Positions 14,401 to 38,200 of a stretch of DNA of 64,000 nt are shown here, piece after piece. The number at the start of each line of letters is the position of its first letter. The stretch's first letter is position 1. This stretch comes from Camelus dromedarius (Eukaryota), in NCBI RefSeq assembly GCF_036321535.1, contig NC_087466.1, forward strand, positions 1,922,001 through 1,986,000, given 5' to 3'. Position numbers and translations under genes: made by a program. The notes beneath the pieces are model-generated. The model had not been told where the DNA came from and did no database searches. It saw nothing but the letters and a program-made list of their open reading frames with translations.

Positions 14401-17400
14401 GGTAAAGCAGGTGGCAGCTGGATGTCCCAGCCCTATTGGTCACCAGGAGGGAGGGGCTCTGCCCTGGGGTGGCGGGGCCAGGCGCTCACTCACCCCACAT
14501 CCGCGAGGAACTCCTGGAGCCGCTTCTGCCCATGCAGGGACCAGAGCTTGAGCCTGGCCGCGGTGTAGCACGTGTTACACAGGCTGTCGTGGAGGGACCA
14601 ATGCTGGTAGAGCACCAGGCGGAGGCTGGGCCTGCGTCAAGGAGCTGCGGCTGTGCAGGGACCAGCCCCACCCCGACTGCCACCTGCATCACTGGTCAGC
14701 CCCGGTGACCTGGAGCTCTTCGACCTGAGCTTAACTTGACCCATGTGGACCGCACCCTCATCTGAGGGCCTCAGGTCATCCCACTGGCTCCTATGGGTTC
14801 CACGTCGCCAGGCCTCTGCCAGGACCCCACTTCTGGAACAAGTTCTTCAGGCTTGTGGGCCTCGGAACATGGCTGTAAGGATGTCCTGACCCCGTGGGTC
14901 TCTCCTCGCTCACACCAGGGTCTCCGCGGGACGCCAGGCTGGCCCTGCCTACACATTGCAGACATGCTGGTGCCCTGACATCAGGGGCCAGGCCTGTGGA
15001 CAGACGTGGGCTCCGTCCTCAGCACTGCCCCTCCTGATGGCTGGGCCCCGGGGCCACCGTCCCCTTGCCCACACCCTGGTCCCCCAGTGTGCTCTGGCCC
15101 TTTCCCTGAGCTCACCTCAGGGTCTTGGCACGGCCATAGCCTGGCCCAGGCAGCTCTCCCTCCCCCAAGTGTGGCTGGGTTGCTCCCGAGACGTGGCCTT
15201 ACCAGGCCTTTCCTCAGCCCTGCAACTCGACGGCCCCGGCTGCGCCCTCACCACCATGTGTCCTCCATGTGTGCTCTCCAGTCACACCCACTCACCGTTC
15301 TCCCACCTGCTTTGGCCAGTGTGTGAAGCCACTAAACTGCCTGACCGCTTGGGCCCCGCGTGCACTTGCCTGCCTGAGCCTAACCCCGAATGCACCCTGA
15401 TAAATGCAATGCTTCTGAACAGGACAAGCCACACAGACGAGCCAGATGGGCCCACGCCCAGGACCCTGCTGTGCCCACTGGGTCCCCACTGCCAGCCTCT
15501 GGCCCTATCTGCCACCTGCACCTGGCAGGCCTGAGCTGCAAGGATACTCATACTCGAAGGAGATCCGCGTGCAGTCGACAGAGAGCGCGTGCTCCTCGTC
15601 CTCGTGCCGGTGGTTGTGCCGGGATACATGCCGCTGCAGGATGCCCACATCGGTCACGTACTTCATCCTGGGGGGACAGCAGCACTTGGGCATCCTCCTC
15701 TACGTGGGCTGCTCCTCCACAGGACTGAGACCCCTCTGCCACCTCTGTGGGGGTGTGAGCGGGTAGTGCTAGGAGGGTCACAGGCCCACCCACCAGCCAG
15801 TCAGTGGACAGACCCCCGTCTAGGTCCACAAGCAGGATGGTGACAGCAAGGTGTCACCTGAGGGCTGCCCAGGCCAGGATGCTGCCATCCTTAACAGAGA
15901 AAGGAGCAAGCTGGGCCAGGCCTGGGAGACTGCGGACACTCCCAGGCCTGAGTCCATGGGCCCCACTACAGGACTTGGGTGGGCCGGAGTGGGCAGGAAC
16001 CAGGGCACAGGGGCCTCTGCAAACTGCAGGAGCCAGTGCAAGAGGCGGCTGTGCCTGGGGACAGCACGGGGCCCCCAGGACAGCTTACAGCTCCACATGA
16101 TGGCACCAGAGCACCAGGGACGAGGGGCACCAGCCCTGCCCCTCCCCACTCCAGCCTGTGCATCTTGGGGGCGGACGGGCAGGAGAACCAAAGCCTGCTC
16201 CCCGCCAGCCCTCTGTGCAACCCTGTCCAGCTGTCCCCCTACCTTTGAGCTCACATCTGCCCGCCGGGCTGGCCTCAGGGCCCTCACCCCTCTTCCTGGC
16301 CTAAGCCCACCATACACACAAATGAACAGAGAGCGGGGAGCAGAGACCAGCCCTGCCTCACCTCTGGCTTCACCTGCTGGGCTCCCTGAAGGTGGACAAA
16401 GTGTCCACACAAGGCCACACACCACAGTCCTGACAAGGACCCAGGCCCAAGGCCAGCCCCTCCTCAAGGGGCCTCTACAGGGACACTCCACCCAGACCCC
16501 CTGCAAACTTGGCTGTGGCTGGGCCACGCACAGGCCGAGCTCAGACAGCCCGGGGAGCGCGTCTTACTGGGTGATCTTGTCTTGCACCCACTGGTCTGTG
16601 AGTCCAACGATGGCCCACCTGGAAGGACAGGGGGGTGATGAGCAGTGACTGGCAGGGCAGGCGGCACTCACAGGCACGTCCTGCCTGCGAGGCCTGACCC
16701 CGACCCTCCCTCGGACCGGAGATCTGGCCCTCGTGGTGGAGAGAGTATACAGCTCCCATCACAGCGTCACCACCATGGGAGCTCTCAGTGCACAGGAGGG
16801 AAACCCCTAGGCTGAGGACAGCAGGCCCCACTCGCCTGTGCCTGGGCTTACCCGGCCACATGCCACCCTCACCCACTCGGGGCAACAGGGCACCTCTGGG
16901 CCTCGGTGTGGTGGTGCCTGGCCCTGCCCCAGTAGTTTGGAGACCCTGACTCAGCATAGACTGTCCCAGTCCCCACCGTGGGCGCTCAGGGCAGGGGCCT
17001 TGCCAGACAGTCACCTCGAGGGGGAGAAAACCAGAACCCAGAAAAGAGGGCCAGACCCACACACCCCTTGCTCAGACTGCAGGTTCAGTACGCACGTCTG
17101 CCGAGCTCATGGCCCTGGTGGGCAGGGCGCTCCCACTGGGAGCCCAGGTGGCGGGCTGACAGTTACTCCTGCGCCGGACTCCACGACATGCCAGGCAGCG
17201 GAGGTGCCTGGGGAGAGCTGCCTATTCAAACGTCTTGCGTCTCACGTTACTGTCTTACTGGGCAGCAAGGCCAAGCGGTCGGCTGGGAAGGGGGTGCTGC
17301 ACCCGGCCCCACCCCCTGCCCATACGATGCTCCCTTGTCCCCCTGAAGTCTGTGCAGCCGAGGGCCTCACAGTTAGGAAGAAAACCAGGGCCCCGCATGC

Positions 17401-35200: not shown

Positions 35201-38200
35201 TAGAAACCCATCTCAGATTTTAGTTGTCCATCCCACTGTGTCGCCTTAACCATGTGTCTGCAGATTAGAGAACGCATTGAGGAACTTCGCTTGCCTGACC
35301 ACTGGCGACGTGATCGCCATCAACTACAACGAGAAGGTGAGCGGCTCAGCCTCACAGCTGGTGGCCGGGCAGCAGATGTGGTGAGCGCCTAGCTAGAGGA
35401 CCCGCAGCGGGCTCTCCTGTTTGATGGGGCTCTTTGTGAGCAGGGTGGGTCTGACTTTTACCAAGTAATCGCTGCCTGTTTGCTTCTGAAGTCCTCATGG
35501 GCTCAGTTTTGGGGCTCTGTGCTAATCAGCCAGTGCCTCTGTTTTGGGAGCTGATGGACGTGGTTCCTGGCCGCAAGGTGAGTGCTGTACACTTGTTCAC
35601 CCCAGCATGTGTGTGCCAGTGGGCAGGGGGAGGCCTTAGGCCGCACTCGTGGTCAGAGCGAAGCCCCTCCTAGGCTGTGGGGACACAGAAGTGAACCTGC
35701 CCGGTCCTTGTCTCTCCCTCGGCGACGGCAGCACTGGGAGAGCTGGCCCCATCCCGTCGTCTGGACCTATGTCTCCCTCGGCAGCAGGTCTGAGGTCTGG
35801 ATGCCTCTCGTGTCCGTCCATGATGAGAGCTGCGTGGATGCTGGTCCCAACAACTCGGCCATGAAGTGAGACACCACCTCATCTTCCATTTCTCACTCAC
35901 CCTGTGCCCAGTTGGCACATCAGTTCCCACAAGTCAGGACGGCATCCACCTCCCCACTCTCGGCGCACCCCGGAGAAAGACGTGGCGGTCGACAAGGCTG
36001 CCAGCGCCCTCCTGCCTCAGGCATGGAGCTCGGCGATGGGGTCTTTGTCCACTGTGACCCCACAGAGCTGCTGCCAGGGCCTCCCGGCGCTCAGGAGTGA
36101 CCACAGCCCCAGTATGGCTTCTCTGAGGCCAGCTGGCTCCTTAACATGCCTGCCCATCCCCCCAGGACTCGGGCCTGAGGTTCAGCCTCTCCATCCGGAT
36201 CTGTGTCACTTGGGGACCCAGCATGTTCTCTGTCAGTTTCTTCCGTTTGACTGAGAATCCTTATTTTTCAACTTGATGGGCTTTGAGTCACGCTTTTACA
36301 TCTTTTCATGAACTAGGAAATAATCTTGTTCCTTTTAGCTTCGGAGAAATGTTTTCGGTATCGTCCATCTTCACCGAATGCTTTAAGCTTTCCAGGTTAA
36401 TTACAGGCAGCCTTAATGCTACCGTTCTTAAACAACTAAGACAGTAATGTTAAACATGACTCTTAAATTGATGATAGAAGGTAACGGTGACCTTTTTGCA
36501 CTGAAAGGGCAGGTGACTTGCACGGGTAGACACAGAACTGAAACTCAGGTTTGGTTCTGCTTTTAGAAGCGTGGAAGTCCACACTATAAAGGGCCCTTCT
36601 GATTAAAGCTAGGCTGTGATTGGTTTGAGGGGCTCACATGAAACGGACATTTTCACAACTCTGCCATAGTGGTGCTTAGTGAGTGGTCTGGATCAGAGGC
36701 TCCTACAGGAAACTGGGCCCCTTAAAGGGGCCACAGTGGACGCAGTGGTGGGTGCTGTCCTCTTCTCGAGAGAAGGACCCCAGGCTCTCTGGGAACAGCA
36801 CCCAGTTTCCAGTTGAGTCGGGCCCTTGGGAGGCAAACCACCAGACACCAAAAGCAGGTTTGGACCCTGAGGAAATCCGTATGGGGATCTTTAGGTGCAA
36901 ATATAAAACAATTACATATAAAATGTTTGAAGAAATTAAAAAGTTAAAATTTAGCAAGTGATGGAAGTCTACCAGAAATATCCAGGAGCGTTGGAAAAGC
37001 AGAATTAACAGCTGACAAAAAATTAACAAAGAGAAGGTTAAATCCGGAGAAGTGACGTGGAATTCCGCACAGAGAAGTGGGAAAGCGGGACGCGAGAGCT
37101 GGAGGCTGCGGAGATCCCGAGAAAGCCAACCGCTGGTGAGAGCCCAGCGGGAGAAGTGGCGGCCTGAGGAGGGTTGGGTGCCGCCTTCTGGAACCCGCCG
37201 TCCGCCCACAGTGACAGGATTTGAATGTCCAGCAGACGGGATGGTTGCAGATTCCACACAGCAGACCCAGAGAGGTGGGCAGAGAGAAAGCATCTCTCAC
37301 GGAGGAACGGCGAAGAGCAGGCCTTCCAGTAGCAGGCACTGCCCCCCCAGGCATCAGAGTGTCTGCAGAGGCTGAGGGAGTAACTGCCGTCAGACCTTGA
37401 AACAATAGGGCAAATCCCAATACTTCCAGGTGAGCAAAATCTGAGTTTGTTTACCAGTGGAACTTCAGAAGCTTGTGTTTTTGGAATGAGCATCACTGTA
37501 CAGGGAAGGGCCAGGGTGCCAGAAGGAAGAATGGACTAGTAAGCTGACAGATATGAAGTAAGTCAGGGTGAACGCCGTTTCAGTCAGTACTGGTGTTCAG
37601 TACAAGCGGCTTAACGGTGGTACCTGAGACACTGGAGAGAATCCTTCTCGAGGGTTGTTTAGAATTAAAGTGGTCTCTGTTTGCACTTCAGTAAAGGTGA
37701 GTCAGTAAAAATACATGTTGAGTGTTTAAAAATAGTTTAAAATGACTGTTTTGGCTACAGCGTAACAACACATACAACTGAAGCAAACACCCAGAGTACT
37801 CACCATGTGCAGCCCGCACCCTCTGGGATGTCTGCCACCCTGTGGTCCAGGACACTTCTAGTTCTGGTTGCAGTGCCGCTGGCTTATGACTCGCTAGGTT
37901 GTTGTGACCTTCAGCTTGAAAACACAGCTGTAGAGAGAGGTGACCACGTGCCCGGAGGCCATGGACACGGGTCGGGGCAGCAGGGCCCCTGGAGGGAGCC
38001 GGTTGGGGAGGTGGTGGCGTGTCCTCACAGCGACATGCCTTCACTTCTGGTCATCGCAGTGAGGAAACGTGAATACGGACGGGCACCCAGAGCCTTCCCT
38101 CTTAACTCAGGTGACCCCCTCCCCAATGACTAGGGTTTTTCCTGCTGGGACCGTCCCCACTGTCTGCTATAAAAGCAGGACATACTCTGGGGAGAAACAG

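What the first reader, a model, noticed from the sequence alone, without database searches (positions are those of the whole stretch)
14626..35263. Candidate CMG load/unload module: one promoter drives CDC45 and UFD1, and both genes are gated by a minor (U12) intron
Seen: the genes are head-to-head 919 nt apart, and each has exactly one intron with the GTATCCTT donor and CCTTRAC branch signature. Retaining either intron gives an early stop (CDC45 [20 protein letters not shown]1 [23 protein letters not shown]). Established: CDC45 is a core CMG helicase subunit; p97-UFD1-NPL4 disassembles ubiquitylated CMG at replication termination; U12 introns are rare (well under 1% of introns) and slowly spliced; CDC45 mutations (Meier-Gorlin syndrome) and U4atac mutations (MOPD1) both cause primordial dwarfism. 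Inference: helicase assembly and disassembly capacity may be co-tuned at transcription and again at minor splicing. The shared promoter and each intron may already be catalogued separately; I do not know of the combination being described as a unit.
Basis: partly seen in the sequence, partly recalled or inferred. Interest (0 to 1): 0.7.

Follow-up and report, generated by a model that had tools for sequence, protein, structure and literature searches.

The report
Camel CDC45-UFD1 pair, known minor introns
This is the ordinary camel copy of the well-known back-to-back gene pair CDC45 and UFD1. Each gene really does carry one rare minor-spliceosome intron, but both introns and the shared promoter region are already catalogued, and nothing here shows that they work together as a unit.

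Summary
**Observation: confirmed.**
- CDC45 lies on the minus strand (569 aa, 18 coding exons, ATG at 25338).
- UFD1 lies on the plus strand (307 aa, 12 coding exons, ATG at 26258).
- The genes are divergent, with exactly 919 nt between their start codons. That is not the distance between transcription starts.
- Each gene has one GT-AG U12-type intron: CDC45 15547→14626 and UFD1 33202→35263. The other 26 coding introns look U2-type.
- The N gap (27275-27406) sits inside UFD1 intron 1 and touches no coding sequence.

**Interpretation: only partly supported.** Every component is already known.
- The CDC45-UFD1 bidirectional promoter was described in 2001. A 2024 paper already notes UFD1's role in CMG disassembly.
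- Both introns are in minor-intron catalogues.
- The link between CDC45 intron retention and primordial dwarfism is published.

**Evidence against a "module".**
- UFD1 is housekeeping (97% of tissues), while CDC45 is restricted (15%).
- After RNPC3 knockdown, CDC45 retention rises from 7% to 23%, but UFD1 only from 3.6% to 6.8%.
- In one teleost the gene linkage is broken, and in another the UFD1 intron is U2-type.
- About one head-to-head pair with two minor introns is expected by chance.

The parts
5451..25338 (-). CDC45 coding region: 18 coding exons, 569 aa, ATG at 25338, stop codon at 5453-5451.
   Evidence: tblastn with CDC45 representatives, then hand-checked splice sites. The global alignment to a 569-aa fish CDC45 shows no gaps at any exon junction. 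Pfam CDC45 and solved human CDC45 structures match single exons.
14626..15547 (-). CDC45 intron 10, a U12-type GT-AG intron of 922 nt in phase 2, splitting the Asp codon of FEYD|LRL. Donor GTATCCTT at 15547-15540. Branch motif TCCTTGAC at 14643-14636. No pyrimidine tract.
   Evidence: The same donor sits at the same codon in a lizard and a teleost. The human and mouse orthologous intron has been tested as minor-spliceosome dependent (PMC12332006).
15505..15507 (-). Premature stop codon reached 17 codons into the read-through if CDC45 intron 10 is retained.
25339..26257 (.). The 919-nt spacer between the two start codons. It holds both 5' leaders and the bidirectional promoter region. Two CpG-rich blocks are separated by GC dips at about 25600-25800 and 25900-26000. 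Two inverted CCAAT boxes lie on the CDC45 side (25427-25431, 25472-25476). Paired ETS-type GGAAGT sites lie at about 25770/25790 and 26052/26076. A GGC/GGA repeat at 26101-26199 lies in the probable UFD1 leader.
   Evidence: The motif matches are sequence observations only; transcription starts were not mapped.
26258..44282 (+). UFD1 coding region: 12 coding exons, 307 aa. Exon 1 ends right after the ATG (26258-26260, donor GTGAGC). Stop codon at 44280-44282.
   Evidence: Pfam UFD1_N1 and UFD1_N2 match, as do solved human UFD1 structures. The same ATG|GT first exon is seen in sturgeon.
27275..27406 (.). Assembly gap (132 N) inside UFD1 intron 1 (26261-28523), flanked by a LINE-1-like fragment.
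   Evidence: It is intronic, so no frame depends on it. It was not filled or looked up.
33202..35263 (+). UFD1 intron 5, a U12-type GT-AG intron of 2062 nt in phase 2, splitting the Val codon of NPKAV|LENAL. Donor GTATCCTT at 33202-33209. Branch motif CCTTAAC at 35244-35250.
   Evidence: The same donor sits at the same codon in lizard and sturgeon. The human orthologous intron is listed as U12-type in IAOD (PMC7367187) and in the MIDB-based list of PMC12332006.
33260..33262 (+). Premature stop codon reached after 23 codons of read-through if UFD1 intron 5 is retained.

Best explanation
The window holds the camel orthologue of the human 22q11.2 segment CLDN5-CDC45-UFD1-C22orf39.

**What is there.**
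- CDC45 and UFD1 are transcribed divergently from a CpG-rich intergenic region, an arrangement at least as old as bony vertebrates.
- Each gene keeps one old U12-type intron. Such an intron is recognised by the U11/U12 di-snRNP through its GTATCCTT donor and TCCTTRAC-like branch site, and is removed by the minor spliceosome.

**How it most likely works.**
- If either intron is left in, an early stop follows, so the transcript should be held in the nucleus or degraded by nonsense-mediated decay.
- That dependence on the minor spliceosome has been shown for CDC45 in mouse and human cells.
- For UFD1 it has only been measured, and the effect is small.

**Reading of the co-occurrence.** Two minor-intron genes on one bidirectional promoter are best read as two independent ancient features that happen to lie side by side, not as a dedicated regulatory unit.

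**Shown here:** gene structures, splice signals, conservation of position and linkage.
**Taken from papers:** the promoter, the expression breadths and the retention values.
**Inferred:** the fate of intron-retaining camel transcripts.
For: **Structure and signals.**
- Complete gene models, with only these two introns carrying U12 signals.
- Gene identities confirmed.
- Camel origin: a Camelus bactrianus CDC45 isoform is identical over all mapped N-terminal exons.

**Linkage across species.**
- UFD1 lies head-to-head with CDC45 in a lizard and in a sturgeon, where the order MRPL40-PANTS-UFD1-CDC45-claudin is also kept.
- GTATCCTT donors sit at the same codons: both genes in the lizard, UFD1 in the sturgeon, CDC45 in Seriola.

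**Already in the literature.**
- The CDC45-UFD1 bidirectional promoter, including a remark on UFD1's role in CMG disassembly (PMC11025027, citing Igaki 2001).
- The CDC45 minor intron, retained after Rnpc3 loss, with transcript loss after a U12 antisense oligo (PMC12332006).
- Cdc45 retention linked to Meier-Gorlin syndrome and MOPD1 (bioRxiv 10.1101/2020.03.16.994384).
- The UFD1 U12 intron, listed in IAOD (PMC7367187).

**Chance estimate.** With 1,262 human head-to-head pairs among 26,813 genes (PMC1487180) and about 700 minor-intron genes (PMC12332006), 0.9 to 1.5 pairs with two minor-intron genes are expected.
Against: - Linkage and both U12 introns have been kept together in camel and lizard, and in human by the literature. 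In sturgeon the linkage and the UFD1 donor were seen. That span is over 400 million years by my own dating, which leaves room for selection on the combination.
- Both human introns move in the same direction on RNPC3 knockdown.
- Several other CMG life-cycle genes (DONSON, MCMBP, TRAIP) are also minor-intron genes. A pathway-level dependence on minor splicing is therefore not excluded.
- No camel RNA data could be examined.
- The genome-wide test of pairs was only estimated, not run.
Confidence: 0.85

Rival explanations
1. One reading: CDC45 and UFD1 form a selected load/unload module for the CMG helicase. On this view they are co-tuned first by a shared promoter and then by slow minor splicing, so that assembly and disassembly capacity rise and fall together.
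For: - The divergent arrangement is conserved in camel, lizard and sturgeon, with U12 donors kept at the same codons where the assemblies show them.
- p97-UFD1-NPL4 does disassemble ubiquitylated CMG (PMC5382235, PMC9633789).
- Both human minor introns show higher retention after RNPC3 knockdown.
- DONSON, MCMBP and TRAIP are also minor-intron genes.
Against: - Expression breadth is 97.3% of tissues for UFD1L against 15.1% for CDC45L, with separate CpG clusters (PMC2887419). The camel spacer likewise shows two CpG blocks with GC dips between them.
- UFD1 retention rises only from 3.6% to 6.8%, below that paper's own threshold for calling retention.
- In Seriola, CDC45 keeps its U12 intron but has no UFD1 within 10 kb upstream.
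- The Tetraodon UFD1 intron is U2-type.
- VCP, NPLOC4, LRR1, UBXN7, the GINS genes and MCM2-7 are absent from the minor-intron list.
- About one such pair is expected by chance.
- UFD1 serves many p97 substrates beyond CMG.
Confidence: 0.08
2. A wider, looser version: minor splicing tunes the CMG life cycle as a pathway (CDC45, DONSON, MCMBP, TRAIP, UFD1). On this view the physical pairing of CDC45 and UFD1 is incidental.
For: - Five genes of the CMG assembly and disassembly pathways appear in the MIDB-based minor-intron list of PMC12332006.
- Mutations in CDC45, DONSON and minor-spliceosome components all give primordial dwarfism (PMC10626419; bioRxiv 10.1101/2020.03.16.994384). By my own knowledge TRAIP mutations do too.
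Against: - The gene set was picked after the fact.
- By my own knowledge, minor-intron genes are already described as enriched in DNA replication and repair functions, so this would not be new.
- The core players (MCM2-7, GINS, VCP, NPLOC4, LRR1) are not in the list.
Confidence: 0.05
3. In camel, the two introns are removed by the major spliceosome despite their U12-like look.
For: No camel RNA evidence could be obtained. U12-to-U2 conversion does happen: the Tetraodon UFD1 intron is U2-type, and the sponge CDC45 intron at the same position is U2-type.
Against: - Both donors match GTATCCTT perfectly and fit the U1 consensus poorly.
- Both introns have near-consensus branch motifs at the right distance and no pyrimidine tract.
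- The human orthologous introns respond to loss of a minor-spliceosome protein.
Confidence: 0.02

Closest known systems
Human and mouse CDC45-UFD1 (UFD1L/CDC45L) bidirectional promoter pair at 22q11.2
   Same: Same two orthologous genes in divergent orientation on a shared CpG-rich intergenic region with ETS/GGAA and GC-box type motifs. The same neighbours are present (claudin on one side, PANTS/C22orf39 on the other). The link to UFD1's role in CMG disassembly has already been noted in print (PMC11025027).
   Different: This is the camel copy. The transcription starts are not mapped here; only the 919-nt ATG-to-ATG spacer is known. In human, the annotated UFD1 and CDC45 mRNA 5' ends lie within 267 bp of each other inside a 556-bp fragment.
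Catalogued minor (U12-type) introns of human CDC45 and UFD1 (MIDB, IAOD)
   Same: Same codon positions and the same phase 2, with GT-AG termini and a U12 donor and branch site.
   Different: The camel UFD1 donor is the full consensus GTATCCTT, whereas the human one is GTATCTTT (PMC7367187). The camel introns are 922 and 2062 nt long; the human ones are about 1.9 and 2.6 kb by the coordinates in PMC12332006's supplement.
Other minor-intron genes of DNA replication (DONSON, MCMBP, TRAIP, DNA2)
   Same: They are replication genes whose expression depends on the minor spliceosome. Several are primordial-dwarfism genes.
   Different: They are not physically paired with one another. The CDC45-UFD1 adjacency is the only extra feature here, and it is consistent with chance.

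Membership tests
U12-type (minor spliceosome) intron, GT-AG subtype | 5' splice site matching RTATCCTT directly after the exon end | tested here: met
   GTATCCTT sits at 15547-15540 (-) and 33202-33209 (+), the only two copies in the window. Both lie at in-frame exon ends.
U12-type (minor spliceosome) intron, GT-AG subtype | Branch site TCCTTRAC-like, about 8-21 nt from the 3' splice site, without a pyrimidine tract | tested here: met
   CDC45 has TCCTTGAC with the branch A 11 nt before the last intron base. UFD1 has GCCTTAAC with the branch A 14 nt before it. None of the other 26 coding introns has the motif in its last 40 nt.
U12-type (minor spliceosome) intron, GT-AG subtype | Orthologous intron classed as U12-type in curated catalogues | tested here: met
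   UFD1 is listed in IAOD (PMC7367187). Both CDC45 and UFD1 are in the MIDB-based list of PMC12332006.
U12-type (minor spliceosome) intron, GT-AG subtype | Splicing depends on minor-spliceosome components | not testable with these tools
   Published for the human and mouse orthologues only: CDC45 shows a strong effect and UFD1 a small one.
U12-type (minor spliceosome) intron, GT-AG subtype | Formal score from intronIC or a position weight matrix | not tested
   intronIC is not available here. Only consensus matching was done.
Bidirectional (head-to-head) promoter gene pair | Opposite strands, divergent, transcription starts less than 1 kb apart | tested here: inconclusive
   The genes are divergent, and their ATG codons are 919 nt apart, so the starts must be closer than that. 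The starts themselves are not mapped in camel.
Bidirectional (head-to-head) promoter gene pair | Shared CpG island | tested here: met
   The region is CpG-rich from about 25000 to 26600, but with two GC dips that split it into two blocks. This matches the separate CpG clusters reported for human (PMC2887419).
Bidirectional (head-to-head) promoter gene pair | Co-expression of the two genes | not testable with these tools
   Published human data point the other way: UFD1L is expressed in 97.3% of tissues and CDC45L in 15.1%.
CDC45 family (Pfam PF02724) | Significant match to the family profile over the protein | tested here: met
   Single exons score 44.5 and 53.5 bits against a cut-off of 34. 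The full model aligns end to end with a 569-aa fish CDC45.
UFD1 family (Pfam PF03152 and PF24842) | UFD1_N1 and UFD1_N2 subdomains present | tested here: met
   Exon 4 scores 61 bits for N1. Exons 5-7 match consecutive parts of N2. Exons 2 and 5 are identical to solved human UFD1 over the 43 residues tested of each.

The most novel reading that the evidence does not exclude
The long-kept physical pairing of a CMG subunit gene with a CMG-unloading adaptor gene, each holding a minor intron since at least early bony vertebrates, could reflect selection for joint dependence on minor-spliceosome activity. It might be part of a wider minor-splicing control of the CMG life cycle that also involves DONSON, MCMBP and TRAIP.
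Probability: 0.08. Interest if true: 0.55.

Novelty: already known. Interest (0 to 1): 0.2.

Why it matters
If the pairing were functional, it would give a concrete route from minor-spliceosome defects (MOPD1, Roifman and Lowry-Wood syndromes) to faults in replication and growth, acting on both the loading and the unloading of the replicative helicase. As it stands:
- the CDC45 half of that idea is already published;
- the UFD1 half looks weak in the one human data set found;
- the camel locus adds only a clean orthologous example, plus evidence that linkage and intron type go back to early bony vertebrates.

Tried and rejected
- **Camel RNA reads.** No splice junction or retention level could therefore be seen in camel.
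- **Sequencing-run list.** RNA-labelled runs hold 79-89% of the sampled words of a stretch that is mostly intron. That says nothing about retention, because contigs carry no expression levels.
- **ATATCCTT (AT-AC type donor).** There are three hits against 0.4 expected. None is at an exon end: one lies inside CDC45 exon 4 coding LDILQ, one in UFD1 intron 1, and one after the UFD1 stop codon.
- **Homology search with the fish CDC45.** It returned only teleost proteins in the listed top hits and added no new taxa. Taxa were then identified through cluster look-ups.
- **Sponge isoform X2.** It was not on record; isoform X1 worked.
- **Supplementary tables of the head-to-head gene paper.** They are not held as text, so the pair's expression correlation could not be read.
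- **Genome-wide permutation test.** It was not run, because the lists cannot be passed to a script. It was replaced by an analytic estimate.
- **Fetching a teleost UFD1.** A full-length UFD1 could not be fetched for Seriola, because the length window of the homology search excludes full-length hits from single-exon queries.
- **Complex prediction.** Not used, because no claim is made that CDC45 and UFD1 bind each other.
- **Bacterial promoter and terminator scan.** Not used, because it is irrelevant for a mammal.

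
Full report
**What is in the sequence**

The pattern GTATCCTT occurs only twice in the 64-kb window, once on each strand. Reading the flanks shows that both copies start directly after an in-frame exon end.

- **Minus strand.** The exon ends in the codons for FEY plus two bases of an Asp codon. 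The intron runs from 15547 down to 14626. TCCTTGAC lies 11 nt before the intron's last base. The next exon completes Asp and continues LRLVLYQHW.
- **Plus strand.** The exon ends in NPKA plus two bases of a Val codon. The intron runs from 33202 to 35263. CCTTAAC lies at 35244-35250. The next exon continues LENALRNF.

Pfam and the Protein Data Bank identify the flanking exons as CDC45 and UFD1.

**Gene models**

I mapped CDC45 with representatives found from one exon. I mapped UFD1 from its open-frame blocks. Every splice site was then checked by eye, and both coding sequences were assembled.

| Gene | Strand | Coding exons | Protein | ATG | Stop codon |
|---|---|---|---|---|---|
| CDC45 | - | 18 | 569 aa | 25338 | 5453-5451 |
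| UFD1 | + | 12 | 307 aa | 26258 | 44280-44282 |

- The CDC45 model aligns end to end with a 569-aa fish CDC45.
- The UFD1 model has the same length as the solved human protein.
- Of the 28 coding introns, only these two have the U12 donor and a branch motif in their last 40 nt. The other 26 are ordinary GT-AG introns.
- Three ATATCCTT matches are not at exon ends.

**The 919 nt and the gap**

- The figure of 919 is the number of bases between the two start codons (25339-26257). The distance between transcription starts must be shorter and is not known for camel.
- UFD1 exon 1 ends immediately after its ATG, with donor GTGAGC.
- Exon 2 begins right after an in-frame stop and aligns to residues 2-44 of human UFD1. 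Exactly one residue is therefore supplied by exon 1.
- The same ATG|GT first exon is present in sturgeon.
- The N run 27275-27406 lies inside intron 1 (26261-28523), next to a LINE-1-like fragment. No reading frame crosses it, and the UFD1 exons on both sides are in the right order and orientation.
- I did not look up or fill the gap.

**Which genome, and what surrounds the pair**

- A Camelus bactrianus CDC45 isoform matches all mapped N-terminal exons. Earlier notes of this scan also call this genome camel.
- To the left of CDC45 lies a claudin reading frame on the plus strand. To the right of UFD1 lies a PANTS-like (C22orf39) exon.
- This is the gene order of human 22q11.2.

**Conservation**

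| Species | UFD1 next to CDC45? | CDC45 intron at this codon | UFD1 intron at this codon |
|---|---|---|---|
| Camel (this window) | head-to-head | U12 (GTATCCTT) | U12 (GTATCCTT) |
| Lizard (Phrynosoma) | head-to-head | U12 (GTATCCTT) | U12 (GTATCCTT) |
| Sturgeon (Acipenser) | head-to-head | upstream exons missing from the assembly | U12 (GTATCCTT) |
| Teleost (Seriola) | none within 10 kb upstream; a PAP2 gene instead | U12, textbook signals | not examined |
| Tetraodon (IAOD paper) | not examined | not examined | U2-type |
| Sponge (Corticium) | no UFD1 in the locus (10-kb flanks) | same position and phase, U2-type (GTAAGG) | not examined |
| Barnacle (Pollicipes) | no UFD1 in the locus (10-kb flanks) | no intron there | not examined |
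| Spider (Oedothorax) | no UFD1 in the locus (10-kb flanks) | gene is intronless | not examined |

- The sturgeon also keeps the whole order MRPL40, PANTS, UFD1, CDC45, claudin.
- The IAOD paper lists human UFD1 as U12-type with the weaker donor GTATCTTT (PMC7367187).
- Linkage and both minor introns therefore go back at least to early bony vertebrates. They have come apart in teleosts without either gene being lost.

**What is already known**

- The CDC45-UFD1 bidirectional promoter was characterised in 2001. It was studied again in 2024, in a paper that already points out UFD1's role in CMG disassembly (PMC11025027).
- The CDC45 minor intron is a standard test intron. It is retained after Rnpc3 deletion, and CDC45 mRNA falls after a U12 antisense oligo (PMC12332006).
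- A 2020 preprint already links Cdc45 minor-intron retention with Meier-Gorlin syndrome and MOPD1.
- Both introns are in the MIDB-based list used by PMC12332006.
- I found no paper that treats the combination as a unit.

**Evidence bearing on the proposed module**

- **Transcription.** A CpG-island study uses this very pair as its example. UFD1L is expressed in 97.3% of tissues and CDC45L in 15.1%, and CpG clustering gives them separate islands (PMC2887419). The camel spacer also shows two CpG-rich blocks with GC dips between them. CCAAT boxes lie on the CDC45 side, and paired ETS-type sites lie further towards UFD1.
- **Splicing.** The values below are mis-splicing indices for retention in A549 cells after 72 h of RNPC3 siRNA.

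| Minor intron | Control | RNPC3 siRNA | p |
|---|---|---|---|
| CDC45 | 0.067 | 0.232 | 0.014 |
| UFD1 | 0.036 | 0.068 | 0.038 |

The direction is shared, as it is for most minor introns. More than 93% of UFD1 transcripts are still spliced, however, and the UFD1 intron fails that paper's own criteria for calling retention.

- **Chance.** With 1,262 human head-to-head pairs among 26,813 genes (PMC1487180) and about 700 minor-intron genes, 0.9 to 1.5 pairs with two minor-intron genes are expected. Head-to-head pairs as a class are preferentially kept in vertebrates (same paper), so conservation of this one is not special.
- **Specificity.** By established knowledge, UFD1 is a general p97 adaptor.
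- **Other pathway genes.** In the same minor-intron list, VCP, NPLOC4, LRR1, UBXN7, the GINS genes and MCM2-7 are absent. DONSON, MCMBP and TRAIP are present. That leaves open a loose pathway-level dependence on minor splicing, but I picked the gene set after the fact.

**What could not be done**

- No camel RNA evidence on junction use, retention or transcription starts is therefore available.

**Verdict**

- The interpretation joins known facts into a hypothesis that the available evidence mostly speaks against.
- The locus is an ordinary, well-conserved orthologue of a known gene pair with two catalogued minor introns.

Noticed in passing
window 26101-26199: A long GGA/GGC triplet repeat, with a perfect GGC run, lies in the probable UFD1 5' leader just upstream of the ATG at 26258.
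   Followed up: partly
window 9651-9815 and 9096-9329, minus strand: A Camelus bactrianus CDC45 'isoform X3' (514 aa, P0002) uses an extra exon inside intron 13. It then reads the canonical exon 14 region in another frame, giving an unrelated tail of about 100 residues. This is probably a non-productive or mispredicted isoform.
   Followed up: partly
window 254-1045, plus strand: A claudin (CLDN5-like) single-exon reading frame is interrupted by a second assembly gap at 441-572. Only the part after the gap was tested, and it matches the Pfam claudin family.
   Followed up: partly
window 27407-27523, minus strand: A LINE-1 ORF2-like fragment (peptide ...[11 protein letters not shown]...) lies directly beside the gap in UFD1 intron 1. 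This may explain why the assembly broke there.
   Followed up: no
window 23689-23696 (-), 27680-27687 (+), 44602-44609 (+): ATATCCTT occurs three times against 0.4 expected. None of the copies is at an exon end. One codes for LDILQ inside CDC45 exon 4.
   Followed up: yes
L006 16441-18159 (sponge Corticium candelabrum CDC45): An intron at exactly the same codon position and phase as the vertebrate U12 intron has a U2-type GTAAGG donor. The position is old, and the intron class differs.
   Followed up: partly
L004 10001-11653 (spider Oedothorax gibbosus): CDC45 is encoded by a single uninterrupted exon of 550 codons.
   Followed up: no
L003 12576-13232 (sturgeon Acipenser sinensis): The stretch that should hold CDC45 exons 9-10 shows no match. 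The record is flagged UNVERIFIED_CONTAM and the annotated protein is only 479 aa, so this is probably an assembly fault. The 3' end of the expected U12 intron (TCCTTCAC, then CAG) is still visible.
   Followed up: no
window 31000-35400, sequencing runs X1-X10: RNA-labelled runs filed as 'reproductive system metagenome' hold 79-89% of the sampled words of a stretch that is over 90% intron. They therefore contain much pre-mRNA or carried-over DNA of the host animal.
   Followed up: no
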